Shown here one piece after another: positions 2,830-42,200 of a stretch of DNA of 64,000 bases. Within the stretch, counting starts at the first letter, position 1; each line of letters opens with the position of its first letter. Position numbers and translations under genes: made by a program. The DNA comes from Callorhinchus milii. Lineage: Eukaryota. Below the pieces are notes generated by a model. It saw nothing but the letters and a program-made list of their open reading frames with translations. It was not told the DNA's origin and did no database searches. Location of the stretch: positions 5,580,001 to 5,644,000 of the forward strand of contig NW_024704758.1 of the NCBI RefSeq assembly GCF_018977255.1, written 5' to 3'.

Positions 2830-3143
2830 CTAAACCAACAGGCTGGTAAACTTCTCCACAACATCATTTGTTTTTGCATGTCGAATTTCACAACTAAATT
2901 CCTCTGGTTCATCATCTGGTTTCAGCTCAACTTCTAGCTGTGTAAATGTAGAGTAAAGTCCATTTTCACCAATGCGGGGCACCTGTACAAATTGTTCTTC
3001 GGCAAAATCCGTCCATCCCTTACTCCACAGAATGGCAATGTCCCCTGGGCAAAAGTCATCAACCGTGCAAGACAATGTTAATGTTTCACCAATTTTGGGT
3101 CGATCAGGTTTGTGTATGATTTCTGACACCTTAGGAGGTACAC
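2830..3143 (-). CDS. Gene E post-TM Ig C1 domain 6 (last coding exon)
   Basis: ttttcag|GT GTA CCT CCT; LSCTVDDFCPGDIAILW...FSCEIRH...EKFTSLLV then TAG, followed directly by gtatgt. Confidence 0.85.
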
Positions 3144-6100
3144 CTGAAAACACAGAAGCAATGCTTAATGTAAGATCCACGATAGCAACCACATGATGAC
3201 ACAATTAACGAGAAGGAATAAAACTGTTCTGAACTTTAACAAGATGTTATGTGTCAGGCTGGCTCAGTGCTACTCACTTGCCTCCGAGCCAGAAGTAGTG
3301 AGTTCAAGCCAGTCCAGGCTGACATTCCAAAACAATGCTGGAGATTGCACTGCATAAATGGAGGTAATGTCTTATCATTAATAATATGCTTCAACGGAAA
3401 AGACTGACAATCCAACAATAAAATGCAAAAGTGCATCAGTCTCATGCTAAATAAGACCTTCTACCCATGCAATGAACACTATTAAGTCCAAAAAAGGTCA
3501 GTAATGTGAAAATTTGTTGCAAGATTTCAGAAATATATTAAATGCTCAGAATATACTCACGTTTTAGAGGCAAATGACAACGTCTTTTGAACACGTCTGT
3601 TTTGTTATTTTCTTTGTAATGAAAAATTAAATCTTTTTCAAAGTCGTCTGCAGTCAGGAGGAATTTCAAACAACTTATCATGCTGTAAGTGTTTTGAAGT
3701 TCCTGAGTTAGACTGGAATTCACAACTCCTTCAGTAACACGATTGTCCCCTTTGTACCACTCAATACTAAAATCTTTATGACAAAGGCCATTCATTGTTT
3801 GGGACACAGTTAAGTGTTTACCAAACTTAAGAATCTTTGGTTCCAGTACGAATTCTGAAAATCTGGGAGAACCTGTAACAAGATTAGAAAAATTCTTAAT
3901 AGGTACAAATATGAATAAGTCCTGATGAATCTATTTTATTAAACTGTCTAGATATGTCATGTCTACACAAATTGTTAACTCTCCATGGTTTCTGATAACA
4001 TGAACAAGCACTAACCAGTGCAAGAGACACAATTTCTATTTGAATAAAGCTTGTGTTAAACCAGCAAATCATGGCAAAGAGAGCTGGGAACACAAAGAAT
4101 TAAGCATCTTTTTCACGGGCACATTATCTTACATAAAACACTAGCTTCAGGTACAATTTATTTTGAGGGTGGGGGGGGCGCGAGGAGGAAAGAAAGGTGC
4201 CAGTACAGTCTTGTGTTTCTTTTGCTACCTTTAAACACAAACAGAATAGCAAAAAAATCGGTAAAGACTGTCCTTTGAATTTCTTCTTTGTTGTTCGCCT
4301 TTAGAACTTTGGAAAAAGGGAAGCAGAGCGATGAAGATTAATAAAGACTTAGCATCAGTCTAATGGTAAAAGTTATATTTTCTGGGGACAATTGGACTTC
4401 GATTTTCCCTGAGCACAGACTAATATATATACTGTATACCATCATTTGTCCTGGATTGTCCAGTTTTACTTCAAATGGTTTATTAAAGTTACCACTTCAA
4501 AAGCAACATGGTATAGTAACAGCATACCTATTGGTCTAGCATAATTTTTGGGATTACTCTCATCCCCTACATTGCTCATAGTTCCCACCTCATTTCCTTA
4601 CGTATTGATGGACATTTGTAATGTCCTGCAATTAAATATTGTTCAAGTTACCTTTAATCAACAGTTGATAAGTATGCCTGTAAGGTTTGGTTGATGATTT
4701 TGAATGGCAAATTTCTACTGTGTATTTGGCTTGATGGTCATCAGTGGTTGGAGTAAGGGTGACTGTGGTAACTATACAGTTCAGACCATATTCACTGGAT
4801 GATTCTTTCGTAATTGTTCCGTACTTCCCATTCATTTCCATTGCCACATTGTCTCTGAACCACTCGACCTGAATGTCTTTTGGATAAAACTCTTTTATCG
4901 TGCAGGTTAAAGTCAATTCCTTTCCGATTTCAGGGATGGAAGGGTCGCTCAACACTTCTGATACCTTTGGGAAAGCCACTGAAATACAGAGAAAGTGGAA
5001 GAAAAAATGTAAGGTACGATTACGGTTTCAAATCAACTGAAAAGCACAAAATAGGTGAAAACTCTCAATCTTCATCCCAACATATATGTTCATCCAAATT
5101 AATTCAATAAGTATCAATAATTGAAACAAAAAACAAATGTATTCTTCTGGAATATGTGCTTCACAAAATTACTTGGCAGAAAAAAACTTCAAACATACCC
5201 AGGTTTTCAGGAATGTATTCTTCGACTCTTGGATACATAAGACTCTCATGATTAACCTCACATTTGTACACACATTTCAGGTCTAAGAGCGACACAGTAA
5301 ATGCATATTGACTGGTCAGTTCAAACACGTTTTTCTCAAGAGAACCTTGAGTTATCTTCAGCACCTCATCGGTTTCAATAAGATCCTTGTCTTTAAACCA
5401 ACGAACCACTATTTCTTTCGGATAAAATGAATGCACTTTGCAGGACAAAGTCAGTTTCTCTCCAACTACAGAGTTTGGTGGGTCACTCACAATGGTATTC
5501 AGGATTGGAAAAGCTGGAAAAGAAAATGAACAGCTTATAACTGCTTCCAACATATTTCATACAGTAATCCTTGCATTTGATAAAGCATCTTATCAGCCGT
5601 TGAAACGTATCAATGTGCTTTTACGTAAAGTGTAGTGACTGCTTATTTGTAGGTGAATGTAAAAGAATTACCTTTAACTTGCAGTTTGACAAATTTCTCA
5701 ACTGGGTTCTGCAAGGCAATATGCTGAACTTCACAAAAGTACTGACTGTTTTCAGTTTCTTCAATTGTTGCATTGAATAGCAGCATACTGCGAACACTCT
5801 GAGTGTGGTCAGGATAACTGAATTCACTCAGACTATGGGAAAACTCTGCTGCACACCAGCTTTCATCAACTCCATTAATACATTTTACTATGGGACGCTT
5901 CTCCCCATCATCCTTTATTTTGTACCACTTGATAACCAAGTGACTTGGTTTGAAAAAATTAATGGGACACGTCAACATGACTGAATTGTTATGAAGCACA
6001 ATAGGAGGTTGAATTATTTCATCCAATTTCGGAGGAACTAAAGGGAAAGAAAAAAAAAACATTACTTTGGTTGGAATCCCACATTAGCTGTGAAGGTAAA

Positions 6101-9100
6101 TAGTCACTTGATAGTAATATCATTTGTTGATAGAGAACACATTATTTTTCTACAATGTATCATGAATTACTAACTTGGGATTTGGTAAAACAATCAAACC
6201 AAGGAACCAGAGATAGTTGATACTACTGTTTATTACAGTGTGAATTTGGGCTTAAGGCTGCATGGAATTGTAGAAAATTTACTTTTAATTTGGAAGTTTT
6301 TTTAAAATATATAAACTGCAGTTTCCAAATTAAGACCAAATTTAAAGATTTGTCACAATGCTGTGCAATTTCCAAATGAAAGATTTTCAGGCACATCTCA
6401 AACACTCCTGGACTGGATTTAAGGATACAGATTTGGTATCTGACTAACAGATTAGATCCAGAAACCAGTGTAATCAGATGCTGGAGTGCAGCATCTGAGT
6501 GAACTGTATGGATGTGCTGTTTTATTCACCAGAAAGTAATTGGGGAAAAGATGGTGGAGAGAATTCAACAAGACATTAACCCAAGAATTCAAAATCATGG
6601 ATCTTCGGTACAGATTTAGATCGCCCATAAACGATGAGGTTTGAGAAGGCATTGCCATAGCAACTTGCGACTATAATTACAATGGGCACAAATTGGAGAC
6701 ATGTGTGCTCCAAGCAAAAAATTTCACAGCAGCTACGCGTAATAGAAGTTACTATTAATTGACATTTGTTCACTTACTTCCAGTAACATCTAAAGAGAGG
6801 GTTTTGATGACTCCTTTGCCAGATGGATGGATCACTTCGCACATGATTTTGGCTTGGTTGTGCTCATTTATGTCAGGAAAGATACAAAGAATGCTGGAGA
6901 GACTGAATGTTCCATCTTTATTTTTATAAACATTGGCTGTTTTGACTTCCCACTGATGAAGATTCTCGTAGATTGCGATCTCAGAGTCTGGGTTTTTGTT
7001 CTTTTTACCACCAAAAGGTAAACTTTGCATTTGACTTTTAACATATTGCCCAATCAATTTATTCTGCCCTTCCTTCATGTTCTTCAGGTACCAGAAAATA
7101 GAAATAGCTTCGGGTTGGAATCCAGAGACGTGGCACATTAATTCAGCCAATTCTCGGTGTACAATACGAGCGGGTATTTTGATACCTGAAATTTTTGGTG
7201 GAACTGAGAATAAAACGAAATAAGTCAAAGCCGAGAACATTTCAAATTGCGTTTCTCTAACATCTTCAATCCACGACTGTTTGTGGGACGCTGCTGTGCG
7301 CAATTGGCTTCCGTGTTTCTCCCACAAATATACAACCAATTCACTTTACAGTATATTCTGTGAAGCGCTTTGAGACATGTGGAGTCCTGTAGCTCAGTGG
7401 TTAGAGCACTCGCTTTGCAAGCGAGAGACCTGAGTTCAATTCCAGGCAGGTCAGGGCGAAACCTTGGGCAAGTTTCCTTACTCCACACAGAGCCTAATAA
7501 TAATCCCTCCAAAACCAAAAACAATAATAAATTGGTCATTTTCAAGCTACGACTGTTTGTGGGACATTGCTGTGCGCAATTGGCTGCCGCGTTCGCCCAC
7601 AAATATACAGTCAATTTACTTTACAGTGTGTTCTGTGAAGCGCTTTGGGACGTCCTCCCGACGTGAAAAGCGCTATATCAAATGCAAGGATTATTATTAT
7701 TATTATCTAGAAGTCGTGAAAAGCGCTATATCAAATGCAAGGATTATTATATTTTTATGAGCAGCTCCATTCGCATCTGATACCCTCTTAATATTAGCTT
7801 GAGAGAGGGAACTAGATTCATACCTAAAAAGGAGAGGTATGGAGAAAGGGCAGATAAATGGGACTGAAAGGATTGCTCTTTAGTACAGACAGGACACACA
7901 TGATGGGATGACAAGGGGAGTCGACACTTAACTGGCCAAACAAAAGTGTCTATGAATAAGTTAGAGTGGAGGGAAAAAGAGATAATCAAGCAACTACAAC
8001 ATGTCTGTTCCATACAAGATACATAAGAAAATCTACATAACTACTGGACAGAGGAGCTTTCACCCCCTTAAACTGCTAGTTTGCGCAGGGTCACCTTACC
8101 ACAGATATATTCCCTATTAGTAGCACACAAAATTTCCAAATGATTACCTTTATAAAAGTACTTCATGTAAGCATAGATCCCAAATATTATTGCTGCAACA
8201 GTGAATATAATGCTCATGACGATACTTGCAACGACCGATCCTTGAGAAATACGAATTTCTGCCTCTGTGAACAAAAATAAATAACATTTTGTTAAAATAC
8301 TTTTCAAATTAACTTTGGTTTTCAATTGCTCAGAATGCTACAGCAGAGAATAACAAGTGCCTAATACTTAATCAGGGAGACCAACAAAGATCAGACCTAT
8401 CAGTATCGTACATTTTGCAGAACAACATGGAATTTTCTGGAGAAAATGGGCTGTGTCATTACCCAGTAAGGATATTTCAAGCATACTTTCTCAATACTTC
8501 ATCTTGGTTGAGAATTTTCACCTGTGTTAAAACAAGTGCCTCGCAGGTCTATGGCCTTGCAACTTAATGTGGCTGTTTCTGCTGAACAGTAGGTAGCACA
8601 GTTTATCGCACATCCTCTCCCACACAAGGATCTGTGTGTTAACCAACACCCTCATCCTTGCCTAGCTCCACTGTTCCCTGTACCCTCATCAGATCAACTT
8701 CAAGATCCTGACATTGGTAAATCCCTCCACACCTTTGTCACATTCAAACTTCTCCAATTTCCTCCAGCCTCACTCTCCTGCCCACTCCACAAACTGAGTC
8801 CTCTGGCATGTCTGGCTTCCCCACCATCAGTGGCCAAGCTTGAACAAACTATGCTTCCGTTCTCTGAAACTCCCTCCCAAAATCCCTCATCTCAATCTCA
8901 ATCTTAGAATTTCATCTAGAAGTCCACGCCTTAGCCCTATCTTCAAAACCCTTTTTAAAAAAATCTCTCCGATTTGTACCTCGTCACCTTTCCACCTACG
9001 TTTTGAATCAGAGGTTATGTTTGCCATTTTAATAAACAACAAAGACCACTGCAACTGACCTTTCAAAGTAACATGAGCTTCCACGGAGAATGGCTTTTTA

Positions 9101-11497
9101 AACGTCTTGTGTTTTGCTTCACATTCGAAAGTGCTGCCAATATCTTCTTTGACAGGTAACAGTCGAACCTGAATGGACATATTGCACAGTCCATCAGTGT
9201 CAATGACTCTTTGGCTAATGCATATATCTGTTAACTGCTTCTTTTCTCCTTGTCGCATCTTCTGAAACCACTCAGCACTGGCTTCGCAAGGATAAAATCC
9301 ATTTAGCTGACAATCCAAGGTCATCTCTCCTCCAAGGCCGAATTCCACCGTTTCTTCTGAAACCACAATCACTGAGGGCCGTGCTGCCAGAACAAACACA
9401 GGTGTTGTAGTGTAACATAAATACCTACAAATACACTATCACTTTACAGTTAAAATTATGAATCAAAGTGACAAGGCGCTACACCAAATGCAAGGATTAT
9501 TATTATTGTATACAAAACAAACATTTAGCATTCCTTTTTACAAGCTACAAGCGCTTTGAGAAATCCTCCCAATGGGAAAGGTGGTATATCAAAACCAAGG
9601 TTATAGGATTCTTAAGTAATGTTTGCATCAATCACCAGCAGCTTACCTAAAACTTCAAGACGTACAGTGCCAGTAGCTTGCTCATTTGGGGGCACAAATA
9701 CTGTGCACTTATATTCTCCCATTTGTTTCATCGTCACGTTTTTCAACAACAGCGACATGTTCCCTTTTAGGATGGAAGATTCCAGCAGCTCAACGCCTTT
9801 CCCCAATTTGAATAAGGCTCCGTTAATATACTTAAAAATATCATCAGTGAAGGACCACAGAACTCCAAGGTGGTTTTTGTCCAACGTAATGCCCGTCAGG
9901 TCAGCAATTTCACACTGTAGGGATACGTCTTCATTTACCAAACATTCAGCAGGACTCGTTCTCAATGTCATCCTTGCGGCTGTCGATATAAATAAAGGCA
10001 ATTCAGTATTATTCAGGAAAAGAAACGTAAATACATTTGACCCACCTAAACTGTTAACAAGCGAATAATTCCTCCATTGCCCCTCTCGGAAACACAGACC
10101 AAAAAGACTACGCGTGTCACAACGTGATCTATTCCGTCACTTGAAGACGAGCACAATTGGAAGCAAAATAGAAACTCCAAATTTCGCCCTCAAAATCCTT
10201 TACAGTGTGTCCTGTGAAGCGCTTTCAGGCGCCTCGAAGACGTGACGAGGCGCTGTATCAAATCCAAGGATTATTATTGTTATAATAGGTGTCACTTGTA
10301 CTGGGGTGGGGGGGGGAAATGGACACCCTGTACCCTAAGGGGGGAATAGACACCCTGTACCCTAAGGGGGAAATGGACACCCTGTACCCTAAGGGGGGAA
10401 TAGACACCCTGAACCCTAGGGGGGGGGGGGAAGGGGGATAGACACCCTGTACCTAAGGGGGGGGGGTTAGACACCCTGTACCCTGGGGGGGGGGGAATAG
10501 ACACCCTGTACCCTGGTAGGGCGGGGGGGGGGGGGGGAATAGACACCCTGTACTCTAAGAGGTGGGGGGGGCTTAGACACCCTGTACCCTGGGGGGGGGG
10601 GGGGTTAGACACCCTGTACCCTGGGGGGGGAATAGACACCCTGTACCCTGGGGGGGGGGGGGAATAGACACCCTGTACCCTAAAGGGGGAATAGACACCC
10701 TGTATCCTAAGGGGGGAATAGACACCCTGTACCCTGGGGGGTGGGGGGGGTTTAGACACCCTGTACCCTGGGGGGTGGGGGGGGTTTAGACACCCTGTAC
10801 CCTGGGGGGTGGGGGGGGTTTAGACACCCTGTACCCTGGGGGGTGGGGGGGGGTTTAGACACCCTGTACCCTGGGGGGTGGGGGGGGGTTTAGACACCCT
10901 GTACCCTGGGGGGTGGGGGGGGGTTTAGACACCCTGTACCCTGGGGGGTGGGGGGGGGTTTAGACACCCTGTACCCTGGGGGGTGGGGGGGGGTTTAGAC
11001 ACCCTGTACCCTGGGGGGTGGGGGGGGTTTAGACACCCTGTACCCTGGGGGGTGGGGGGGGTTTAGACACCCTGTACCCTGGGGGGTGGGGGGGGGTTTA
11101 GACACCCTGTACCCTGGGGGGTGGGGGGGGGTTTAGACACCCTGTACCCTGGGGGGTGGGGGGGGGTTTAGACACCCTGTACCCTGGGGGGTGGGGGGGG
11201 GTTTAGACACCCTGTACCCTGGGGGGTGGGGGGGGGGGGGAAGACAGTGGTGGGTCAACATTTACTGAATATTTGGGTTCAAGACCTCCACCTCTTCCCG
11301 CTCTCACGTGACATACCCCCCGCGCCCCCCATCCCGGACCCCAGCGATGCTCCGGGTGACGGCCTCATGAGACAGTGAAGAGCCGAGGCCTCCCCCCCCC
11401 CCCCCCGGGGCCCCGGGACTGTACCTCGCGGCGGCGGTGACAGGAGCAGCAGCAGCGCGGCCAGACCCAGGCCCAGGCCCAGGCGCTGCCCCGACAT
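2830..11497 (-). CDS. Gene E: type I Ig-superfamily receptor, SP-V-C1-TM followed by six C1-type Ig domains (predicted cytoplasmic), about 968 aa
   Basis: Exons (minus): 11425-11497, 9647-9979, 9060-9383, 8148-8264, 6778-7203, 5672-6037, 5199-5513, 4652-4978, 3561-3872, 2830-3143. All have AG/GT boundaries and phase-1 junctions. They sum to 2907 nt = 969 codons ending in TAG. Confidence 0.85.
3561..3872 (-). CDS. Gene E post-TM Ig C1-like domain 5 (both canonical Cys lost)
   Basis: cttgttacag|GT TCT CCC; GSPRFSEFVLEPKILKFGKHLTVSQTMNGLCHKDFSIEWYKG...; donor C|gtgagt; 312 nt. Confidence 0.8.
4652..4978 (-). CDS. Gene E post-TM Ig C1 domain 4
   Basis: atttcag|TG GCT; LTCTIKEFYPKDIQVEWFRD; F-strand reads YTVEI (no Cys); donor gtaact; 327 nt. 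Confidence 0.85.
5199..5513 (-). CDS. Gene E post-TM Ig C1 domain 3
   Basis: LSCKVHSFYPKEIVVRWFKD...YKCEVNHESL; donor gtatgt; 315 nt. Confidence 0.88.
5672..6037 (-). CDS. Gene E post-TM Ig C1 domain 2
   Basis: VPPKLDEIIQPP...LTCPINFFKPSHLVIKWYK...YFCEVQH; donor gtaatt; 366 nt. Confidence 0.88.
6778..7203 (-). CDS. Gene E post-TM Ig C1 domain 1 with long internal insertion
   Basis: PPKISGIKIPARIVHRELAELMCHVSGFQPEAISIFWY...DGTFSLSS...IMCEVIH; donor A|gtaagt; 426 nt. Confidence 0.88.
7381..7752 (+). mobile_element. Young SINE, full length, with duplicated 3' tail; preceded by a 3' half-copy (about 7263-7375)
   Basis: Same head, core and tail; the tail is repeated at about 7706-7752. Confidence 0.88.
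8148..8264 (-). CDS. Gene E transmembrane exon
   Basis: EAEIRISQGSVVASIVMSIIFTVAAIIFGIYAYMKYFYK: hydrophobic run followed by basic residues; ttcacag|...|gtaatc; 117 nt. Confidence 0.88.
9060..9383 (-). CDS. Gene E extracellular C1 exon
   Basis: LDCQLNGFYPCEASAEWFQ...FECEAKHKTF; donor gtcagt; 324 nt. Confidence 0.9.
9647..9979 (-). CDS. Gene E V-set exon
   Basis: VSLQCEI...GVLWSF...GNMSLLLKNVTMKQMGEYKCTV; donor gtaagc; 333 nt. Confidence 0.9.
10310..11240. repeat. G-rich minisatellite of about 30 units (about 30-33 bp, agacaccctgtaccctgggggg...) in gene E intron 1
   Basis: Tandem units read directly; long G runs. Confidence 0.9.
11425..11497 (-). CDS. Gene E signal-peptide exon
   Basis: MSGQRLGLGLGLAALLLLLSPPPR G|gtacag; GC/CpG-rich; 73 nt, phase 1. 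Confidence 0.75.
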
Positions 11498-11615
11498 GGT
11501 CCTCGAGGTTGGGGTGAGGGTCTGATCCGGTGTGGGGGGTGTGGGGTCGGAGAGGCCTCTGGCGCTCTCCCTCTCCCTCTCTCCGCGGCCTGAGCTGCAG
11601 CCGCGCCCCGACCTG

Positions 11616-11629
11616 AGTTTCACTTTCAC
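11616..11629. promoter_or_regulatory. ISRE/IRF-E upstream of gene E
   Basis: AGTTTCACTTTCAC matches the AGTTTCNNTTTC consensus; 119 bp upstream of the ATG. Confidence 0.65.
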
Positions 11630-11639
11630 TATCACCACG

Positions 11640-12185: not shown

Positions 12186-12369
12186 GGGCATTTGGTATTG
12201 GTCTTTATTACGTCTTCGGGACGTCTCAGGCCGTCGCCCACAGAGCGTGTTGGGGAGAATAATTTTGCAGGGCTCTGGGGAGAGCGCGGGGGAGTGGGAT
12301 TGACTTGGACAGCTCTTTCAAAAGAGCCGGCAGACAGAACGGGCCGAATGGCCTCCTTCTGTGCTTTAT

Positions 12370-12693
12370 GGAGTCCTGTAGCTCAGTGGTCGGAGCGCTC
12401 GCCTCGCAAGCGAGAGACCAGGGTTGGATTCCCGGCAGAGGGCGAAACCTTGGGCAAGTTTCCTTACTCCACACGCCTGATAATAATCCCACAAGAAAAA
12501 GGATATATAAAATTGGTCGCTTCAATCCACGACTGTTTGCGGGACACCGCTGTGCGCAATCGGCTGCCGCATTTCGCCCAGAAATATACAGTCAATTCAC
12601 TTTACAGTATATTCTGTGAAGCGCTTTGAGACGTCTCGAAGACGTGAAAAGGCGCTATATCAAATGCAAGGATTATTATTATTATTATTATTA
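12370..12693 (+). mobile_element. Young SINE, full length
   Basis: Same consensus. Confidence 0.88.
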
Positions 12694-16447: not shown

Positions 16448-16761
16448 TCAACTGGAAATTTGGTACTTTATCTCCTTCACTGCTGTGGATTCAGGATGAG
16501 TAACCTCGCATCTGAGATCAGTGTTCTGATCAGAAGGATCGGGGGCAAATTCGATTTTTGTAACTGAAGCAAAGAGTCCATTCTCTGCAATCTGCGCCTT
16601 GGTGTTTGTCACTGGGCCTGTGTAGGGCACTTTCCCTTTGAACCACTTCACTTCAATTTCTTCAGGAGCGTAGTCACTCAGTGAAACACTGAAAGTCGTT
16701 TGCTTGTTTACCTCTGGAATTGTTGGATTGCATTGCATTTCGGACACGGTGGGAGCAGAAG
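16448..16761 (-). CDS. Gene D post-TM domain 6 (B-strand Cys lost; ends TGA then G|gtgagt)
   Basis: ASAPTVSEMQCNPTIPEVNKQTTFSVSLSDYAPEEIEVKWFKG...LRCEVTH. Confidence 0.82.
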
Positions 16762-19700
16762 CTGAAAGAGTGCAATAAAATATAATAAATAACCCTTGTG
16801 TTTAATATAGCACATTTCAAGTCATGAGGATGTCGCAAAGCATTCACAGAATGCACTATACAGTGTAGTGACTGACTTTATATTTTTGTAGGTGAATGTG
16901 ACAGCCAGTTTGCACACAGTAATGTCTCACAAACAGCCATGAAATGAATTACCCATTCTTATCTGAGGGATTGTTGGCCAGGACACAGAAAGGAGCTCCC
17001 TTCTCTTTTTTAATGTGACATAGTGCCACAGGATCTTTAATGTCAAGGACCTTGATGGGTGGTAGACAGGTTTAGATAGGTCAATCGATCGAGGTTTAAA
17101 GTTTCATCCGAAGGACGGCACCAACAATATAGTGCAACCCAAGTACTGCACTGGGATTTCAGATTAGATTATGAGCTTCAAGTCATGAAGTGGGACTTGA
17201 ACCCAAAACCTTCTGACTCAGAGGCAAGAGAGTGCTACCAAATGAGTTAGGCTGACAAACAGAAATAAGTGTGTGCATTTACCCCAACACAATTATCAAC
17301 ATTTTTCGATACAGGAAAAATAGAAACTTGAATAGAAATAGAAATCAGGCAAGCAAAAAAGGTACAAAATTGAATTTTGTAAAAAAACAAAAAAATATTG
17401 TTAACCCTTGTGAAGATGCTGGGCAGCTTCATTCAGAAGAAAATGAAGTGAAATAGTGGTTTGTGTACGTTATTTACACATCAGTAAATAAAGATCTCAA
17501 TACGATTTGTGGAAAAAGCACGAACGTGCCTCCCTTATTTCTTGTGATAGAGCATGGGTTCAAGCAGCATTCTGCATATGGATATGTAATGCAACAACAA
17601 CATGAGTTTATATAGCAGCCTCGGCATAGGATAACGTCTCGTAGCACTTCATATTGGTGGGGTTGAATGCCAAGCAAAGGAGAAGGAGGGGTGAATATGC
17701 ACTGTCAATGATGAAGGCTTTTAGGCAGAATTTAAAGACTTATAGAGAATTGGTGAGACGAACGAAAAGGAGGAAGCTCCAAAGGTTAGGAGCATAGTAG
17801 ATGAAGACTCCGCCATCGGTGCAAGTACACCAATAAGGGAAGGTGCAAGGGAAAACTGTTCACTGGCCTCTGTTTGTCACCCCTGTTTGAACCTACCTGG
17901 AAGGAGAAGGAGAATGTCTCTTTGAATAGGTTCTTGCAAAGCTTTATGTTTGACTAAAAAGGAAACTGTTGTATTGTGATCCAAAGCGGTTGGTGTCATC
18001 GTTAAGAAGGAAGTCAGCTGGAAATATCCATTTTCATCCTTCTCAGGCCCTATATTTCTTACTCCTTCGGAGATGGTCGTTTTACCTTGTAACCAAGTGG
18101 TTACGATTTCTTTTGGAGAAAAATTAGTCACACAACACCTAATGACCAGAGGTTGTCCATAGGACGGCTCGTTTGAATCAAACTCGATGTCTGAAATTTT
18201 CGGAATTCCTGTTTCAAGAAAGCACAAGGAAATAATTGTTTTCCCTTAGAAGTAATCATTGCACCTACTCATGAATGAAGAAATATTGTCCCACAGTAAC
18301 ATTTTGCAAGACAGTACAACAACCACAAATTACATTTGTATAGCGCCTTTCACGTGGGGAGGATGTCCCAAGGCATTGGACAGTCAGGTATTTGGACCCG
18401 AGTAGGGGGTTGGGATCAGGAGGGGTGGACTGTGGGATGGAGTTCCAAAGGGTGGAGGCAGAGAGGCTGAAGACCTGACCGCCAATGATGGGATGGGCCA
18501 GGCGGGGAACATGGAGTCGGGGCCTGCTAAGCGGAGGGAATGGACAAGTTGATATGGAGTTAGCAGGTCGCAGAGGTAGGAAGGAGCAAAGTCGTGGAGG
18601 GTTTTGAAGGTGAGGATGAGGATTTTGAACTCTATCCTCTGGGGGATGGGAATCAGTGGAGCCAGACGAGAGTGGAAACCAAATAAAAAGTATCAAATCG
18701 AAAAGGAAAAAGAACATAAAATGAACTGACTGAACAATTTAAGTTGACCCAACTGTGAAAAGCAATTTTCAAAGGACAATTGTTTTTCACATCACTTCCA
18801 TCAAATCTTAAAAGAAGAGGTTAAATGATTTTGGTAATAAATGTATGTGTGGATTTATGAATCTAACCTTAAATTTCAGACTCATGCTACTGTGTCTGGT
18901 TCCAAATTCTTGGCTAAACTGTGCCATGCTATTTTTTTTAAACAAAATATATAACTATTTGTAGATATATATTTATGCTTATCTCACACAGTATCAAACC
19001 CATAACAGAAAAAAGAGATGCAACAGGATATATGCAATCCCTTTTCCCATTACCCATCTCGCCAGACAAGCTTGATCAATCTGCACTGAACGTCTTGTAT
19101 CTTCCAGGTTATCACTTCCCACCACTCACGCTTGCAGTCAGTCAGAACCAGATGCTACTGTAATTCCTTGCTCACCGTTCTCGCAAACCTTTTGTCACCA
19201 TGCAGCAAGAAAGATTATAGCAAATCCCCAGGATATGTTTCTAAATCTTTTTTGTTCCTAACTGCACTCAGAATCAGTCAGCCTCTAATTCTCTACTTAT
19301 AACACTCATTGTTGGCCCGCCCTGTGGTGCAGAGTTCCAGCCAAAGTCATTCATCTCGGGCCACTTTGAACACAATTTGTTAATAATTGCCATTTTAACG
19401 TCAATTATTCCTAATCCGTGGATGGTTTTATGCAATGCCCTTGCACTCAATACGAAGTTGAAATACGACTTTCATGAACTCATTTCCATGGAAAGAGGTG
19501 TCATTCCACTGTTCTTGCCACAGTTTAAACTCTGGCTGCAGATGTTTATCTAGAGTAACTCAGATAGTCAAATGACCCACTGCTCCTCCATTTCTCCATC
19601 TTCTTTCCCTAGTCTTCCTACTGTTATTCAATCAATGGAAACAGCACTTAAAGTTATCGGGCAGTAATCAACAAAAACCTACATTGCCAAATGTGAGGTT

Positions 19701-32911: not shown

Positions 32912-33216
32912 TCAACTGAGTTTCAGATGAAAGAATTTGCTAATCGGGTCCATCTCAGTCATCACATCACATTGCAATAGGATTCCATCATCCTCCTTCT
33001 CTGCTGTAAAAGTTAGTGCACACTTGAAACTTCCATCTGGAAGGGCTATCTTTTTAACAACATCTTCCTTTTCATAAGGGTATACACCCTTAAACCAAGT
33101 GATGTGCGTGCTGTCCATGGGGTGCCCTTTAATAGTGCAGGCCACAGTAACAGGCTGACCAGCTTTCGGATTTTCTGTTTCACACCTGATGTCCGAGACA
33201 AAATCCATGTCCTCTG
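32912..33216 (-). CDS. Gene C post-TM domain 7 (terminal)
   Basis: ttttttcccag|CA GAG GAC; VACTIKGHPMDSTHITWFKG...LQCDV...FHLKLS then TGA. Confidence 0.82.
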
Positions 33217-36200
33217 CTGGGAAAAAAGTAAAAACAAGCCTTTGGTAAAGAATTAAATGCAGTCAGTCATATCTATGTTTTAGGTAACTCGTTCTTGAAG
33301 ATGAACACATTGTTCTATTGATACATTGTGCCGTGGAGTCCTTGTCCCTTACAAATCCTAGTTACCATTGCTCTCGTCTATCACGAGTGAACATTTCCCT
33401 GGGGTTTCCCCGGGTTATGTGCATTATGTCAATGGTAGTATTGCTCTTGTGGAAGAGACAATTCCTTAGGAATCTCTCCGACAAATACACTTCTCCTGGT
33501 GCCCAATAGTGGCATGGTTGTTTACAGGATGTTACAGAAATCGAATAGCCAGAAAGTCTTCTGGATGAAGAGAGGAAGCCATGAAAGTGAGAGAGAAGAC
33601 ATGATTGTAACTCAGCATCTTAATTGAACATCTATGAAGCTACCATGAGTCTCCAGCTAGGATGACCTTTCTCTTTTCAGCTTTGGCTTTCAGGGTCGAG
33701 TCCTTGCCTAGACCTCCAATTCTCATTAATGAGCCATAAAAGCTGCTCAGCAATGTTCAATGCCTTGGATTAACTGCAGACCTGCATTGATGTCTCGGTG
33801 TGTCTCCTCAGATCCAGTTAACCTCCAGGGAGACCCTACTTACCATGAGGGCCATTTAGATAATTCAGAGCATGCTAAATCTTGTGTATATTGGGTATTC
33901 TGGAAAGATGAGATCAAATGAGTCAAATGGCCCTCCTCATTTGAACTCACTTGTGAAAGTAATAGGTGCAAGTTGACAGAAATATCAAAAAACAGAAACT
34001 TGGTAAAATTTAAGAGTATTTTACCTTCATCATCGGATTTCATTTCATCAGATACAGGTTCATCCACCTCATCATCATCACCATCTTAAATGGGAAACAA
34101 GAATATTAGACTGGGCATATTATCAGCGGGATCACGCAAGTAGTTTCAATAAGTTAAACAGCAGTAGCTTTCAACATTAAAGTAACTTAAATCATCCAAT
34201 GTAAACTGTGGGGTGGATTCTACATGATTTTGTAGCTAACAAATTAGGAATCACAAGATTCGGACTTGGAAATGCTGAATCAACTCAATCCATTTTCGGA
34301 TGCGGCTCTCTCGAGTCAGCAAACCAAATGTAGGGTTACCAGAAGACGATCCCTTTTAGATTTCTTATGAAATCCCATTAAGTAATGTCGCAAAATTGAC
34401 CCCAGCATTTCCAACATATCAGCACATGAGTTATGAAGCACGCAAAATTACGGACAGTGGCAGCGTTCAGACACTTCACTGTGTTATGGAAAGTCCATGT
34501 CATGAACCCATTTAATGAACTATCAAACCCCTCCACAATCTTTTCCATTGTAAACTTCTCTGTGAGGACAGTAGGGCATGCATAACTAGGGGCAATGCAT
34601 CTGGGCGATGGAGGGGGAAGAGGGGGAAATAAATCTGGCAGAGTTCTCACTCCTGATCCATGGAATTAGTTCAAGATCTTGCTCAGTTGTGCTATACCTT
34701 ACACAAGAGTCATCTGGTAATTCCTGCTAACATTCATGAATGAAGAACTGAGGCATGATGAAGCCATAGCCTGTGGAGCATGTTCCAAAACATGCCTTTG
34801 TGAACTTTTACTTCTAAGGAAAAAATTGAGAAATATTTAGGCTGTTTCTCCTGGAACAAAGAAGGTTGAAAGGAGACCCGATGGTTGTTTTTAAAAATAT
34901 GAATGGTTTTGAAGAAGTGAACAGGAAGAAGCTATTTCCACTAGTTGGTGAGGTGGTAACTAGATAGCGCAGGTTTAAGGCAATTACCAAAGGAGCAAAG
35001 CAAATGGGTTACCCAGAGGGGTGTTAAGATATGGAATTCCCTACTGGAAGCCACGGTTTAGCCACAATCTCCATACGCTTTTAGGGATATGTAAAAGAGT
35101 GTGGGAGAAAAGGTAAGAGAATGGAATTAAGCAGATAGCATGGTCAGAGATCCAGCCAGGTACAATGAGCCACATGACCACCTTCTATGCTGCAAATTTT
35201 TATGGTTCCATGATTTTCGAGAGTTTAGCCAGGTGACTGACACATCTAGAAACACATTACCTCATGTTTCAGTGTATCCAAATCAGACAGAGTTTCACCT
35301 ATGTTTGCCACCTATAATGAAAACCTCCCCTTGTCTAGCAGGGAATTTGCATTCTTTCCTTGGAGACACACATCTTGCGTACCCAATCTGGACAGAATGC
35401 ATTAGGTCCAGATTGGCAAGAGCCAAGGCTTGTGGACCCCACAGTGTGCTTGGGTTACTTCAGTAGTTAAACCAGCTTTTGATAGCTTGCCATTGAAAAC
35501 ACTACCTGGCAAGCTTTCTGCTGCTGTTCAGTTAGAACCACCCTAAGCATGAGGGCTTTGGCTTGCACATTAAACAGGAGCTGAGTAGCAAGAATCCCTA
35601 CCCCACAGTGGGAGAATAGGGATCAAAGGTAGAATTTGGTAGCAATAAAGCATCTGGAGGGTTTTGCAGTGAATCGGGATGGGATAGAGTGACATTTACC
35701 TCTGATACACAAAATGAAATCCTTCTCCTGAATCTCCTTTGTTTCTTCGTGAGTGACCTCACACCTGAACTCGCATTTCTGATCATCTAAAGTGGCCTGA
35801 AAGTCTATCTTCGAAATGGAAGAAAAGAGACCATTTTCAGCCACTTGCGGAAGGCTATTGATCACAGTCCCTGTGTAAGGCTTCCATTTTTTGAACCATT
35901 TCACAGTGATACCACTGGGTACGTAGTTGCTCAGCGAAATGCTCAGTGATACTGCTTGATTGACTTGCGGTGACACGGGATCAACTTTAATTTTGGACAC
36001 TTGCGGAGAAAAGGCTGAGGAAACAGAAAAACGTGCACAAATGTTAGTCAAGAAAGCAGGTAAACACAGTATTTATTGTGATTTTTTATGGCTGTGAATA
36101 TAAGTATACTCCAATTTGTTGAAGTGCCACAAATCTGAGGAAAATAATTCCATGCATCTATAATAAGAGACAAAAATGTTCTGGGCTGCAGAACCATACC

Positions 36201-39200
36201 TGGAAAACTGACAAAGGCATTTTTCACGATTGGCTTGGTAAATTTCATATGTTCGACACGGAAAGAAAATTCCTTTTCGTAATCCTGGGCATTTGGCACC
36301 AGTTTCAGGCTAGAAGAAAACCGATAGCATCCACCTTCATCTGGATCAGGACCCTGATTAGTGATCCCTTCGTAGATCTTATTGTTCTGCTTAAGCCATG
36401 ATGTTGTGATGCTCTGAGTTGTGAAGTTGCTCACATTGCAGGTGAGAACAAGTTCCTTGCCATACACAGGCTCTGGCGGCTCAAGTATGATGTCGGAAAT
36501 TGATGGGATTCCTGTTTAAAAATCGAACAGATGGGATATTGTTGATAAATTTTAGGTCTGCAATTTCACATCATCTTAGCCTTTGGGATCATTTTGCCTT
36601 GAAAATCAAGATGGCACAGAATTGTGGAAAATTGTTTGATTTAGTTGTCATTTTAAAGATCCACTTATATAAAAAAAGGTTCCAAATTAAGACTGGGTTT
36701 AAAACATTACACATCTCGGGGTAATGTTAAATTTCAAGACAACCTGGTCTCAAAGGCTACGACTAGGAATTTCAAGGCACCTTTCTTCCTTTTAAAAGAT
36801 CAAACGGCAGAATGAAGAGAGCCTTCAGCTATTTTGTTCAAGGCCAAGATTAAATGTATAAAAAAATAACCTGTGCACTTGGTATAGCGCCTTATCACAT
36901 TGTTGAAATGGCTCAAGCACTTCATAGGATCTACTGTTGTGTAGTGAGTGTGTATTTGTCAACAAATGTAGCAATACATTTGAGCACAGCAATGTCCCAC
37001 AAATAGCCCAGAAAGTGAACAACTACATTTTATCTTTAGGATTGTTGATCAGGACAATGGAAAAATTCCCATGAAATATCATAGTGCCACGGTATCTTTA
37101 ATGTCTATCCGACAGGCAGACTGGACCTTGGTTTAACATCGCATCTGAAGGACCTCTGACAATGTAGTGCTTCCCCCAGCACCGCACTGGAGTATCACTT
37201 TAAAATATGTGCACAAAATGGGGCCTTGAACAAACAAGCTTTTGACTGAGCAAGGATGCTACGAACTGAGCCAGGCTGATCGGAATGATACACACTTAGA
37301 AAGAAAATAGTCATTAAACCCAAGTTGCTATAAATTACATTGCTGAATTGCTGAAAATAATTGGATCATTTTTGTTTAGAAACACCACTGTGTAAAATGA
37401 ATGCGGGCTCAATAATCACATCTGGACATGGATACCAGGAATACATTCCTGTAGGGCAGCTTAGCTAGCAGGTTTGCACATCTAAATCGATGATAAAACT
37501 CATGTGAAACACCACACGTCTGTCCACTGATAAAATATTATTTGTCACAGTTAAAATTCTATAACTATAAATTTACATTTGTAGCTAAAATAATATTTAC
37601 CCTTTAAGTTCAACATCCGGCTGATCCTCTGTGGCTTACTGGAGGTTTCCACATGAAGAATTTCCATTGTGTATTCAGTGCCATGATCCAGTTCTGTTGG
37701 AATGAACGTCCACTTGGACTTGCGATAATACAGTCCGGTACTCAAATCTTGTTCAGTATCTTCACTTTCGAATTTTTGTCCTGTTATATCGAAACCCCGA
37801 ATCCAGGAAATTTTATTTTCCTTTGGATAGAAGTCATATGCCTTGCAGGACAGAGTAACGGATTTCCCTGCCTCCGGCGAGGGTGGATCAATTTCAATCT
37901 CCATCAGTTTGGGCGCAGATACTTTATTTGGAACAAGAAAAAATTAGTCAATTGCACATTGACAAACAAAATAATCAACTGGTTCACATTACTGGGTAGT
38001 ATTCAAACAAAATAACACCCCAAACCTTCAATATTTTAATAATAATAATAATGCATAATTATCCTAGTGCCTCATCACGTCGTTGAGTTATCTCAAAGTG
38101 CTTCACAAATTATCCTGCATAGAATCATAGAATTATACAGGACAGAAGGAGACCATTCGGCTCTTGTGTCTGTGCCAGCTCTTTGAAAAGAGCTATTCAA
38201 TCCCACTCCCCCGCTCTCACCCCATAGCTCTGCAAACTTGTCCTCCCCAAATAATTATCTACTTCTCTCTTAAAAGTTGTTATCGAATTGGCTTCCACAA
38301 CCCTTTCATGCAATACATTCCAGATCTGAACAACTCGCTGTGCGAAAAGTTTTCTCCTCACCTCCCGTTTCTTTTAACAACTACTTTAAATTGGTGCCCT
38401 CAGGTTACCGACCCACCCACCAGTGGAATTAGTTTCTCCTTGTTCACCCTATCGAATCCCCTCATAATTTTGAAAACTTCCATTAAGTCTCCTCTTAACC
38501 TGCTCTGCTCCCAGGAGAAGGGAGAGTTTCCCAGTGTCCTGACCAATAATCCCCCATATAAAGTTGGTCATTCACTTTATGATTTTTGTCGGAGATTACT
38601 GTATACAAATTGGCTGCCGTCTTTTGCCTACAAATACAGTCACTACACTTCCTAGTAAATCACGTGAAGCTCCTTGACATGTCCTGATGATGTGATAAGG
38701 CGCTATATCAGAAGTAAGAATTATTATCTTCTGAATTCGTAACCAAAACATAATGGTCCCTCCCTTCGTCTGGTTCAACTGATCCATAATTGTATAAAAG
38801 GTTGAATGACAGAATTGTTAGAAGTAGGCTTTGTGCTTTATCCTCTAAGAAACCCATTCATATTTATATAAGTAGCAAAACACTTTGGAATTTTATGCAA
38901 GATTCATTTATACATTTGCGATTTTATATCTGTCTATGAAAAATAACCAATGAAATGTTACAAAAAAATCATAACATTTCATAGCAAATTGAATACCTCA
39001 CTCTGCTATTTAGCACATTTCATAGAATATACAAAATGATGATCAACAGCGATCCTGACTGCACAGAATTAATACTCACCCAAACGGTCAAGAACCCAAT
39101 GGATCTCCGCCGGTTCTGTTAGGCTCTCGTGGTACATTTTACAAACATACTTGCTGTCAACATCCTTTCTCGTGGCTACAGTCGTCATGTTAGATGTAAA

Positions 39201-42200
39201 ATAGAACAACGCATTGTTTCCCAACATAGGCTCACTATCTTCCGATTCTAATGGGTTCTGCTCATTGTCCTTAAACCATTCAGCTCTGATTGTTTTGGGG
39301 TAAAAGAAATTGACCCGGCAGCTTAATTTCAAAGACTCTCCTGCCACTGGTGTTTTGGGGACTGACTGAATCTGCTCCAGTTTGGGTGTGCCTGAAAGCG
39401 GAACAATATGAACACAGCAATTAAATACAAGGACATTGCAGACATTTTGGAATTAAAATAGGAATTTTTCTTTTTGTCTGTTCATTTTAAGCCACATAAT
39501 TTTTCTTTGATATGTTAGGTAATATTCCCCCAATTACCACCCCACCCCATCCCAACCCCCCCCCCCACACACACACACACATCCACAGCACCCTCCAGTA
39601 TAATTAGCAAGTGTAGGTTTATAAGAGGCATGGCTTGGGGGCTACCGCATTACTAGAACCAGCTAAAACTCCGAGCACGACATTGCGAACACTGCTAGGC
39701 TTCCTTGCTTGTACAGTTCTGATCAACCTGCCCATTCAGCCTTTGACTTGCAAGGTTAACAGAATCACTGCCTCCAGAACCTCTTAACTAGAGCAAAATT
39801 AAAGTATTTCACTCCTGCAGTTCAGAGTTGTTTCAGTAAACTTTAAACATAAAGCATTTTTTAAAATAAACCTACCTTTAATATCCAGCTTAGTTTCTCT
39901 TTTTTCAACCTTGTCAGTGGCCTCATGATGCACCTCACAAACATACTTTATTCCCATGTCTTCCTGAATATCTGGTATAATATTCAATACACTGATGACG
40001 CTATATGTTTTATCCTCATACTGCATCTCACTGATGTAATGGTTAAACTTATTCGTCTGACTGGGGTTGGTTTCGAGCAACCTCTTTGTGTCTTTGTCGA
40101 GGTAAGCAATTTCTTTCTTGTTGCCAGCACCCCAGAGTTGGTACCAAATGATTTTCAATGGTTTTGGTTTAAATCCATTGATGGAACAGGCCAAGGACAC
40201 CAGCTCATTGTGAATGATGCGAGGTGGCAGCAAAATGTCCGAAATCTTCGGTGGAACTTTGGGAAAGAAAAATAGCAGAACAATGCATCAGAAAAGGAAA
40301 AGGTCCCATTTGCTGATTGGAATTTTCTCTGAATAAGCCACAGTTAAAAGGTAGCAATGCTTTTCCTGAAGAAATGCAAAACGATTTGAGATTTCTTACT
40401 TTTATGTAATCAAAGTGCTATGTAAATAATACTAAGAATCTTGCAATTGATATAGCATTATGTCTTTGAGATGCTTCACAGTGCTTCACAGAATATGCTA
40501 TAAAGTGGATTGACTGTAGAATTTGTGGGCGAAGCGAGGCAACCAATTATGCTCAGCAGTATAATAATAACAATAATAATGCTTATATTTGGTATAACAC
40601 CTTCCATGTCGGTAGGACTTCCCAAAGTACTTCACAGAATATACTGTAAAGTGCAGTGACTGTGTATTTTATGGGTGAATGCTACGGCCAATTTGTTCAT
40701 AGACAAATTTTATTTGGGTGATTGTTGGCCAGGACACTGGGAGAAACTCCTTTCTCTTTTCAAATAATGCTATGGACTCTTTGATATCCACCTGAACAGG
40801 CAGACATGGCCTTGATTTTTAATCTCATGCAAAGGAAGGCACCTCGAACAACTCAGCACATCCCAGCAACTTATTGGAAAGTCATCTTGGATTATATGAG
40901 TTCCAAGTCTCGGCACGGGGCTTGAACCCACAACCTTCTGATGAGAGTGCTACCAACGGAGATAGGAATGATCATTGTAACTTTTGCTAAATTTCCAGAT
41001 TACCAGCAAGGCATTTTCACATTAAGATGTTCACAGTAAAATCCTGTGAAGCACTTTCAGACATCTCAACAACAAATGTAAGGATTATTATTATTATATC
41101 ATGCGGAATCACGTGAAAAGTGTTAAATCATTTAGTTACCTCCAACGACCTCCAGAGTTATCTTCTCCTCCATCGCAATCCAAAGAGTTTCATGCTGCAC
41201 TTCAAAGGTTAATTCCATCCCGTTATCGCTGTACATGTCGGGCCACATTTTAATGACACAATTCACAGTGGAATTCCCATCTTTCAAACTAGTAAGTGAG
41301 AAATTGGGAGTAAAGGATTCATCACAACAGCCCTTTCCATTTGAGAGAAGATTCGCTTCCTCATCAGGATTTTTCAACATAGTATTGCTCCAACAATAAA
41401 TTTTCTTCTTTTCCTGTTCGCTTCTTTTGACCCATAAAGTGATGGAAATCTTAACCGGTCTAAAACCAATAACTTGGCAACTTATTAAGGCTTCTTCTTG
41501 GTGTCTAATAGTGGCAGGTTTGCTGATTTTAGTGAATTTTGGAGAAACTGAGGAAAGAAAACAGGAGTTAAAACCAGATATTCGAGTGTTTGCATGTGTT
41601 TGCTCTGTGTGCGCACTGCCACCTAAGCGCTGATTCCAGTAAGAAAATAGAATGGGAGACACTGTTTCATACGTGCACATTAGAACAACTTTAACCCTTC
41701 TGCCCTCATGCTCTGGGACTCCGGCTCACCCACTTCCCTCAATACCTATCTTTTCAACTGTGCTTTTACTTAGAATCTCTGGCCCAACTAGTCCTTGCTG
41801 GTGTTTATTCTCCACACAAGTCTCCACACACTCCATGTTCCCTCCCATACCCTTCTATCCCCTTCTCCCTCAAGCGTTACATAGCTTCCTCTTAGGTTCA
41901 AGCACCTCAAAATGTTAAAACAATTTTGCACGTCAACCTAACATGAAATTTGATATATAAATATAAACTGATGTTCCTGTACTTATGCATTTCACAATGG
42001 ATTTAAGAGGAAACTCGATCCATACATGAGAAAAAAAGGGAGGAATGAACAGCAGATTAGACACAAGATCACATTGAACAGATTCCTAGCACGTTGTAAA
42101 CTGAAAGCCTCCAACCAAGCAACACTTTACCTTTTTTAAAACGTGTTGTATAAACGAAGAACAGTCCAGCAAATGCCAACGTGCTCAGGATCAAGGTTCC

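What the first reader, a model, noticed from the sequence alone, without database searches (positions are those of the whole stretch)
2830..41547. Canonical Ig disulfide lost only in post-TM domains (10 of 19, against 0 of 8 before the TM)
Seen: all eight V/C1 domains before the TM in B-E keep both cysteines. After the TM, one or both are replaced in E4 and E5; D1, D4, D5 and D6; and C1, C4, C5 and C6 (e.g. YTVEI, LTLHV, IQIRV, FSVSL, LTFEV, FSFRV). The core Trp and FxP motifs persist and frames stay open. Known: the cytosol is reducing and intracellular Ig folds often lack the disulfide. Inference: this is independent support for cytoplasmic topology, and argues for selection on the fold rather than decay.
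Basis: partly seen in the sequence, partly recalled or inferred. Interest (0 to 1): 0.75.

Follow-up and report, generated by a model that had tools for sequence, protein, structure and literature searches.

The report
Disulfide loss in post-membrane Ig array
Three elephant-shark relatives of the NK-cell ligand B7-H6 carry six or seven antibody-type domains after their membrane anchor, and about half of these have lost the usual internal disulfide while staying conserved, which fits (without proving) a location inside the cell.

Summary
The count is exact. All 8 V/C1 domains before the membrane anchor keep both cysteines; 10 of 19 domains after it (C1, C4-C6, D1, D4-D6, E4, E5) lack one or both.

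Two corrections:
- Exon D4 is 323 nt and frameshifted.
- The FxP motif survives in 16 of 19 domains, not all.

The window statistic (Fisher p=0.012) is pseudo-replicated. The losses sit at shared array positions 1, 4, 5 and 6 and predate the split of cartilaginous and bony fishes, so about 4 of 7 lineages against 0 of 2 (p=0.44).

Family-wide the contrast holds. In 100 database relatives from sharks to reptiles, 46% of post-anchor against 8% of pre-anchor domains lack the pair. A rough tree correction leaves a 2-3-fold higher loss rate (p=0.001; C-type only p=0.04).

Independent support for a cytoplasmic array: N-glycan sequons are enriched only before the anchor, cysteine counts lose their even bias after it, and the positive-inside rule holds.

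Decay is excluded, apart from D4.

Caveats: positions 2-3 keep both cysteines almost invariably, and RefSeq lists anchor-skipping isoforms in three species.

The scan had already noted this architecture on neighbouring DNA (s1-139332).

The parts
46485..46610 (-). Gene C leader exon (MASNRDGW...FCLAG)
   Evidence: Matches the N-terminus of XP_007885688.2
43930..44280 (-). Gene C V-set exon, both Cys kept
   Evidence: Ectodomain best PDB hit is human B7-H6
42847..43167 (-). Gene C pre-TM C1-set exon, C/C
42131..42244 (-). Gene C TM exon (phase 1-1), ...FFVYTTRFKK
41140..41547 (-). C1, post-TM domain 1, C/F (F-strand Cys lost)
   Evidence: pLDDT 82-92 outside the loop at residues 361-377
39876..40256 (-). 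C2, C/C
39080..39391 (-). C3, C/C
37601..37921 (-). C4, C/M (lost)
   Evidence: pLDDT 90-95
36200..36511 (-). C5, C/F (lost). The Phe is invariant across 18 orthologs
35700..36014 (-). C6, I/C (B-strand Cys lost)
34025..34084 (-).
   Evidence: Present in XP_007885688.2 and V9K7L7; coordinates and splice sites
32915..33216 (-). C7, C/C, last coding exon, followed by a stop
24949..25308 (-). Gene D V-set exon, both Cys kept
23904..24224 (-). Gene D pre-TM C1-set exon, C/C
   Evidence: Pfam C1-set 58.5 bits
23062..23175 (-). Gene D TM exon
22388..22789 (-). D1, C/L (lost)
21549..21926 (-). D2, C/C
20807..21118 (-). D3, C/C
20144..20466 (-). D4, I/I (both lost). Exon of 323 nt with a 1-nt deletion frameshift
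   Evidence: Pfam C1-set score is below the cut-off (18.8 < 21). Elasmobranch orthologs are C/V
17897..18208 (-). D5, C/F (lost)
16451..16761 (-). D6, V/C (lost). A stop codon sits directly before a preserved phase-1 donor
9647..9979 (-). Gene E V-set exon, both Cys kept
9060..9383 (-). Gene E pre-TM C1-set exon, C/C
8148..8264 (-). Gene E TM exon
6778..7203 (-). E1, C/C
5672..6037 (-). E2, C/C
5199..5513 (-). E3, C/C
4652..4978 (-). E4, C/V (lost)
3561..3872 (-). E5, both Cys and the FxP motif lost
   Evidence: AlphaFold2 pLDDT 93.8. Matches MHC-II and beta2-microglobulin C1-set domains, TM 0.74-0.83
2833..3143 (-). E6, C/C, followed by a stop
57949..58299 (-). Gene B V-set exon, both Cys kept
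56801..57127 (-). Gene B pre-TM C1-set exon, C/C. This gene has no Ig array after the TM

Best explanation
Genes C, D and E are ancient paralogs of a B7-H6 (NCR3LG1)-like family. Their mRNA encodes signal peptide, V, C1, a single TM helix, and then, 4-5 residues later, a chain of six or seven C1-set Ig domains.

Shown:
- The layout is in one ORF and one transcript-derived protein.
- The disulfide is missing at array positions 1, 4, 5 and 6 and kept at positions 2, 3 and 7.
- These states are shared with elasmobranch, coelacanth, lungfish, bichir and amphibian orthologs, so they are more than 400 million years old.
- The array is as conserved as the ectodomain.

Inferred:
- In the TM-containing isoform the array lies in the reducing cytosol, where the B-F disulfide cannot form.
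- Domains whose core could be repacked with V/L/I/F/M therefore lost one or both cysteines, while the fold stayed under purifying selection.
- The ectodomain presumably engages NKp30-type receptors, and the rod of Ig domains acts as an intracellular scaffold whose partner is unknown.
For: Architecture:
- My gene C exon model equals XP_007885688.2 apart from the leader and one acidic mini-exon. UniProt V9K7L7 differs at several residues, which I take to mean it comes from an independent transcript, and it holds V-C-TM-7 Ig in one ORF.
- The ectodomain's best PDB match is human B7-H6 (E=2.4e-25; target-normalised TM-score 0.89-0.92).
- 100 of the 150 best family representatives have domains on both sides of a single TM.

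Cysteine loss:
- Family-wide, 228/498 post-TM domains against 15/190 pre-TM domains lack the pair. The per-protein sign test is 79 against 8.
- An irreversible-loss count on domain trees gives 43 events over 196 at-risk units against 10 over 129, a 2.8x ratio, p=0.001.
- Extracellular C1 arrays in the same hit list are intact in 26 of 26 domains.

Topology:
- Sequons run at 1.82x the shuffle expectation before the TM (z=11.6) and 1.15x after it.
- Odd Cys counts occur in 30% of pre-TM and 49% of post-TM domains. Non-canonical Cys number 0.46 and 1.98 per domain.
- Net flank charge is -0.6 on the N side and +2.5 on the C side of the TM, with C>N in 84 of 100 proteins.

Fold retention:
- pN is well below the saturated pS.
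- Ortholog identity is equal before and after the TM.
- AlphaFold2 pLDDT is about 90 for Cys-less domains, and E5 matches the C1-set fold.
Against: - Positions 2 and 3 keep both Cys in 66 of 70 relatives, as strictly as the extracellular C1 domain (56 of 56). Pure relaxation in a reducing compartment does not predict this.
- Lone partner-less Cys are themselves conserved.
- After tree correction the rate excess is only 2-3x, and p=0.044 for C-type domains alone. The domain trees are noisy.
- A frog clade lost the B-Cys in an extracellular C domain.
- RefSeq isoforms in Heterodontus, Bombina and Microcaecilia skip exactly the TM exon, and Scyliorhinus and other models lack it. In such products the array would pass through the ER.
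- No experiment places the array in the cytosol.
Confidence: 0.6

Rival explanations
1. The cysteine pattern reflects domain-specific structural or functional specialisation and has nothing to do with compartment. The array, or much of it, works in the secretory pathway through TM-exon-skipped soluble isoforms. Positions 2-3 keep a working disulfide, and positions 1, 4, 5 and 6 became stable without one, as some extracellular Ig domains do.
For: - RefSeq isoforms differ by exact removal of the TM exon in Heterodontus (31 aa), Bombina (34 aa) and Microcaecilia (37 aa).
- Every exon is phase 1-1, so skipping stays in frame.
- Positions 2-3 are C/C in 66 of 70 relatives.
- One clade lost a Cys in an extracellular domain.
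Against: - Sequons in the array are near chance level, while the ectodomain is 1.8x enriched.
- Cys parity is random, and free Cys are four times more frequent after the TM.
- The only transcript-derived elephant-shark protein, and both RefSeq isoforms of gene C, contain the TM.
- Extracellular C1 arrays keep 26 of 26 disulfides.
- In-frame exon-skipping isoforms may be splicing noise that annotation pipelines pick up.
Confidence: 0.22
2. The pre/post contrast is a phylogenetic artefact. A few ancient losses were inherited by many paralogs and orthologs, and there is no real difference in the propensity to lose the disulfide.
For: - In the window the 10 losses reduce to about 4 array positions, Fisher p=0.44.
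- The unordered parsimony count gives 33 changes over 331 units after the TM and 6 over 77 before it, almost the same rate.
Against: - Counting only intact-state (at-risk) branch length, and including V domains, the rate ratio is 2.8x with p=0.001.
- Different subfamilies lost different positions, for example the frog 'LV CC' repeats and the horn-shark all-'WI' array.
- Control extracellular arrays are intact in 26 of 26 domains.
- Sequon and parity evidence is independent of the Cys columns.
Confidence: 0.13
3. The post-TM exons are decaying remnants, that is pseudo-exons, and disulfide loss is the first sign of erosion.
For: D4 has a frameshift, lost both Cys (its orthologs are C/V) and scores below the Pfam cut-off.
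Against: - 18 of 19 exons have intact phase-1 splice sites and open frames although synonymous sites are saturated.
- They are present in a transcript-derived protein.
- They are 41-61% identical to elasmobranch orthologs, the same as the ectodomain.
- The fold is predicted with high confidence.
Confidence: 0.03

Closest known systems
Human B7-H6 / NCR3LG1 (PDB 3PV6, 3PV7, 6YJP)
   Same: - A V-set plus C1-set ectodomain followed by one TM.
- It is the best sequence match (E=2.4e-25) and a close structural match (target TM-score about 0.9, rmsd 2.0-2.8 A) for the ectodomain of gene C.
- NCBI names the long homologs in Ambystoma, Bombina and Sphaerodactylus NCR3LG1.
   Different: - From my own knowledge, the human cytoplasmic tail is about 170 aa, is described as gag-like, and carries short signalling motifs.
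- Here the whole tail is six or seven C1-set Ig domains, plus one acidic linker in gene C.
Cytosolic Ig domains of titin, obscurin and MyBP-C (I-set)
   Same: - Tandem Ig-fold domains that work in a reducing compartment, most of them without the canonical disulfide.
- Titin I65-I70 is the top Foldseek hit for the whole chain.
   Different: - Those proteins have no signal peptide or TM, and they are I-set.
- The domains here score as C1-set, and E5 superposes on MHC-II and beta2-microglobulin C1 domains.
Extracellular tandem C1-set arrays: shark UrIg2, IgM/IgW-type heavy chains, 'titin-like' XP_041031359.1 of Carcharodon
   Same: - Chains of 5-11 C1-set domains in cartilaginous fishes.
- UrIg2 and Ig heavy chains are among the best sequence matches of the array (UrIg2 is described in PMC12227049).
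   Different: - Their arrays lie before a C-terminal TM, so they are extracellular.
- They keep the disulfide in 26 of 26 domains examined (P0076, P0123, P0148).
Membrane versus secreted splicing of immunoglobulin heavy chains
   Same: One gene may give both an anchored and a soluble product, depending on whether TM-coding sequence is used (TM-skipping isoforms).
   Different: - In Ig genes the TM exons follow the C domains.
- Here the TM exon sits in the middle, so including it would move the downstream Ig domains to the other side of the membrane.

Membership tests
B7-H6 / NCR3LG1 family | V-set plus C1-set ectodomain closest to B7-H6 among solved structures | tested here: met
   3PV6 E=2.4e-25 against the next family, CD276, at 4e-18. 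Foldseek target TM-score 0.89-0.92, rmsd 2.0-2.8 A.
B7-H6 / NCR3LG1 family | Type I single-pass membrane protein | tested here: met
   One hydrophobic segment after the C1 domain. Positive-inside bias in 84 of 100 relatives.
B7-H6 / NCR3LG1 family | Orthology to mammalian NCR3LG1 by phylogeny or synteny | not tested
   The only evidence is NCBI's automatic naming of the Ambystoma, Bombina and Sphaerodactylus homologs as NCR3LG1.
B7-H6 / NCR3LG1 family | Binds NKp30 | not testable with these tools
   Needs a binding assay.
B7-H6 / NCR3LG1 family | Mammalian-type cytoplasmic tail (gag-like region with short signalling motifs; from my own knowledge) | tested here: not met
   The whole tail is accounted for by C1-set Ig domains and one acidic linker. 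I did not align it directly to the human tail.
C1-set Ig domain (Pfam PF07654) | Pfam score above the gathering threshold (21 bits) | tested here: inconclusive
   Of the post-TM domains scanned, D1 27.8, D2 37.5, D3 23.3, D5 51.4 and D6 37.3 pass; D4 18.8 and C7 16.8 fail. The gene C (C1-C6) and gene E domains were not scanned individually.
C1-set Ig domain (Pfam PF07654) | Canonical B-F disulfide | tested here: not met
   Missing in 10 of 19 post-TM domains and present in 4 of 4 pre-TM C1 domains.
C1-set Ig domain (Pfam PF07654) | Invariant strand-C Trp and C1-type fold | tested here: met
   Trp in 23 of 23 C-type domains. The AlphaFold2 model of E5 (pLDDT 93.8) matches MHC-II and beta2-microglobulin C1 domains at TM 0.74-0.83. 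All domains of gene C are modelled at pLDDT 82-96.
Cytosolic Ig-fold proteins (titin type) | No signal peptide or TM; I-set domains | tested here: not met
   A leader and a TM are present. C1-set outscores I-set in Pfam.

The most novel reading that the evidence does not exclude
C1-set immunoglobulin domains, so far known only from extracellular immune molecules, work in the cytosol as the tail of an ancient B7-H6-type ligand. That tail is conserved from chimaeras to reptiles and was lost in mammals. Inclusion or skipping of the central TM exon would decide on which side of the membrane the same Ig array ends up. The mosaic of kept (positions 2-3) and lost (1, 4-6) disulfides would record that double life.
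Probability: 0.4. Interest if true: 0.8.

Novelty: new variant of a known kind. Interest (0 to 1): 0.6.

Why it matters
If the array is cytosolic, a large and old vertebrate family of NK-ligand-like proteins carries a kind of intracellular domain that has not been described for the C1-set. Mammalian B7-H6, with its unrelated tail, would then be the derived form.

The cysteine pattern, the sequon depletion and the loss of Cys parity give a cheap, sequence-only test for which side of the membrane an Ig domain sits on.

The analysis also shows that counting paralogous domains as independent overstated the evidence in the window by a wide margin.

Tried and rejected
- **dN/dS between C, D and E.** Synonymous sites are saturated (pS 0.74-0.80, dS undefined), so only pN against pS could be used.
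- **Unordered parsimony count of state changes.** It gave nearly equal rates before and after the TM. I replaced it with an irreversible-loss count using at-risk branch length. Both rest on noisy FastTree domain trees.
- **The search for homologous proteins with a 7-sequence profile.** It returned only 14 proteins because of the candidate cap, and it did not retrieve gene models for D or E. I do not know whether NCBI annotates them, or how it treats D4.
- **Flajnik et al. 2012 (PMC3709836) and Ohta & Flajnik 2015 (PMC4594805).** These are the papers most likely to mention non-mammalian B7H6 tails, and neither is held.
- **Four full-text searches.** None found a description of Ig domains after the TM of B7-H6 homologs. 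That is absence in this library only.
- **A C7-like exon or acidic mini-exon downstream of D6 or E6.** None found.
- **Post-TM exons as a separate gene.** Rejected because they are contiguous with V-C-TM in XP_007885688.2 and in V9K7L7.

Full report
**What is in the window.**
The window is vertebrate DNA. Earlier scan notes, and exact protein matches, identify it as elephant shark, Callorhinchus milii. It contains no N runs. On the minus strand lie four tandem IgSF genes.

I built exon models from open segments and phase-1 AG/GT sites.
- Genes C, D and E each have a V exon, a C1-set exon and a 114-117-nt TM exon. These are followed by seven (C) or six (D, E) further Ig exons, and a stop follows directly after the last domain.
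- Every exon is phase 1-1.
- Pfam calls the post-TM exons of gene D C1-set: D1, D2, D3, D5 and D6 score above the cut-off, D4 below it. C7 also falls below.
- Gene B has V and C1 exons.

**The observation.**
- The eight pre-TM domains keep both cysteines.
- C1, D1, C4, E4, C5 and D5 lack the F-strand Cys.
- C6 and D6 lack the B-strand Cys.
- D4 and E5 lack both.
- The strand-C Trp is invariant.

Two details need correction.
- The [FY]xP motif is gone in C5, C7 and E5.
- D4 is not an intact exon. It is 323 nt from its natural acceptor to its donor. A 1-nt deletion separates the A-strand frame from the rest, and reading from the acceptor meets a stop.

**Are the post-TM exons part of the same gene?**
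Yes for gene C. My model equals RefSeq XP_007885688.2 except for the leader and a 60-nt acidic mini-exon between C6 and C7.

UniProt V9K7L7 differs at several residues. I therefore take it to derive from an independent transcript, which is an inference from the differences and from my knowledge of that accession series. It carries V, C1, TM and seven Ig domains in one ORF.

The ectodomain's best solved relative is human B7-H6 (E=2.4e-25; Foldseek target TM-score about 0.9). The array resembles generic C1-set domains: Ig heavy chains, SIRP-alpha and UrIg2.

**How independent are the ten losses?**
Not very. The domain positions are orthologous between C, D and E and across vertebrates.
- The position-5 Cys-to-Phe change is invariant in 18 sequences from sharks, coelacanth, lungfish, bichir and amphibians.
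- Position 4 is C/V, C/I or C/M almost everywhere.
- Position 6 is V/C or I/C in the C and D lineages.
- The sawshark ortholog of gene E has E's exact pattern (CC CC CC CI HF CC).

So the window holds about four ancient loss events, plus secondary ones in D4 and E5. The raw Fisher p of 0.012 becomes 0.44 at the level of array positions.

**Family-wide test.**
A profile of position-2 domains found 417 relatives, and the best 150 were returned. Of those, 100 have Ig domains on both sides of a single predicted TM, mostly as V-C-TM-C(n). The species looked up include chimaera, sharks, rays, coelacanth, lungfish, bichir, frogs, salamanders, a caecilian, a gecko and a skink.
- Ignoring alignment gaps, the canonical pair is missing in 228 of 498 post-TM domains and 15 of 190 pre-TM domains (Fisher p=1e-23).
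- Within proteins the post-TM fraction is higher in 79 and lower in 8. These counts are still not independent.
- On FastTree domain trees, with losses counted as irreversible and only intact-state branch length counted as exposure, I get 43 events over 196 units after the TM. Before it I get 10 events over 129 units (8 in C domains, 2 in V domains). The ratio is 2.8, p=0.001. For C-type domains alone it is 2.0, p=0.044.
- An unordered parsimony count gave nearly equal rates, so the size of the effect depends on the method.
- Natural controls in the same hit list are C1 arrays that precede a C-terminal TM. They are intact in 26 of 26 domains.
- The pre-TM losses are real, but they are concentrated in an extracellular C domain of what are apparently mostly frog proteins, which has S, A or G at the B-Cys position.

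**Independent evidence on topology.**
- N-glycosylation sequons occur at 1.36 per 100 aa before the TM. That is 1.82 times the shuffled expectation, z=11.6. After the TM they occur at 0.61 per 100 aa, 1.15 times expectation.
- Domains with an odd number of cysteines make up 30% before and 49% after the TM. Non-canonical cysteines rise from 0.46 to 1.98 per domain.
- The 12 residues flanking the TM carry a net charge of -0.6 on the N side and +2.5 on the C side.

All three fit a type I protein whose array is cytosolic.

**Selection against decay.**
- Between C, D and E synonymous sites are saturated, yet pN is 0.41-0.52 both before and after the TM.
- Each paralog has a co-linear elasmobranch ortholog. 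Its post-TM domains, Cys-less ones included, are 41-61% identical, the same as V and C1.
- Replacements are hydrophobic: V, L, I, F, M, A, W and Y.
- AlphaFold2 models every Ig domain of gene C at pLDDT 82-96. It models E5, which lacks both Cys and the FxP motif, at 93.8. E5's best structural matches are the C1 domains of MHC class II and beta2-microglobulin.

Only D4 looks eroded.

**What does not fit the simple reading.**
- Positions 2 and 3 are C/C in 66 of 70 relatives, as strict as the extracellular C1 domain (56 of 56).
- Single surviving cysteines are also conserved.
- RefSeq lists isoforms that differ by exact removal of the TM exon in horn shark, fire-bellied toad and a caecilian. Other models lack the TM as well. 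If these products are real, the same array also passes through the ER.

I could not weigh their expression.

**Verdict.**
The cytoplasmic reading is the best explanation, but it is not proven, and the window's own statistic adds little to it.

The architecture itself was noted earlier by this scan on neighbouring DNA (s1-139332).

Noticed in passing
window 20144-20466 (-): Exon D4 is 323 nt. A 1-nt deletion near its 5' end shifts the frame relative to the natural acceptor, which has a TACTAAC branch site upstream. In-frame cryptic acceptors exist at 20431, 20419 and 20413, and skipping the exon would also keep the frame.
   Followed up: partly
window 34025-34084 (-): A 60-nt acidic mini-exon (DGDDDEVDEPVSDEMKSDDE) lies between C6 and C7 of gene C. 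It is present in RefSeq and in the transcript-derived protein. AlphaFold2 gives it pLDDT below 50, so it is probably a disordered linker, and its S-x-x-D/E sites resemble CK2 sites. No counterpart was found in D or E.
   Followed up: partly
window 48528-48870 (-): A V-exon fragment is about 66% identical to the V exon of gene B. It is split over two reading frames and adjoins repeat-like sequence. It is probably a pseudogene remnant.
   Followed up: no
window 16447-16453 (-): The stop codon of D6 (TGA) sits directly in front of a preserved phase-1 donor (TGAG|gtgagt). Gene D may have lost downstream exons of the kind gene C still has.
   Followed up: partly
window 10295-12200 and 26130-27090: GC-rich (54-64%), proline/glycine-rich low-complexity repeats lie between the genes. 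They contain signal-peptide-like ORFs that may be the leader exons of E and D.
   Followed up: no
window 7228-7620, 12229-12591, 16073-16447, 27211-27531, 29408-29884, 31290-31544, 47926-48372: Repeated SINE-like elements share the translated motif ...[12 protein letters not shown].../...AANCAQQ... and occur in introns and between genes.
   Followed up: no
window about 55620-55720 (-): A candidate TM exon of gene B ([34 protein letters not shown]) lies between its C1 exon and the proline-rich tail exon.
   Followed up: no
P0165 / P0167 (Heterodontus), P0188 / P0016 (Bombina), P0185 / P0184 (Microcaecilia): These RefSeq isoform pairs differ by exact deletion of the TM exon (31, 34 and 37 aa). 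That predicts soluble V-C-array products.
   Followed up: partly
P0133 / P0165 (Heterodontus francisci): This paralog's post-TM array is made of near-identical repeats. Each scores closest to domain 1, has W and I at the two Cys positions, and is separated from the next by acidic linkers (GKTIPKEIEDDSDRSLLENVPDSER).
   Followed up: no
P0004, P0047, P0052, P0064, P0066, P0074 and others (those looked up, P0004 and P0052, are frogs): Their arrays are built from an alternating two-domain unit: one domain without either Cys (L/V) and one with both (C/C), repeated up to about seven times.
   Followed up: no
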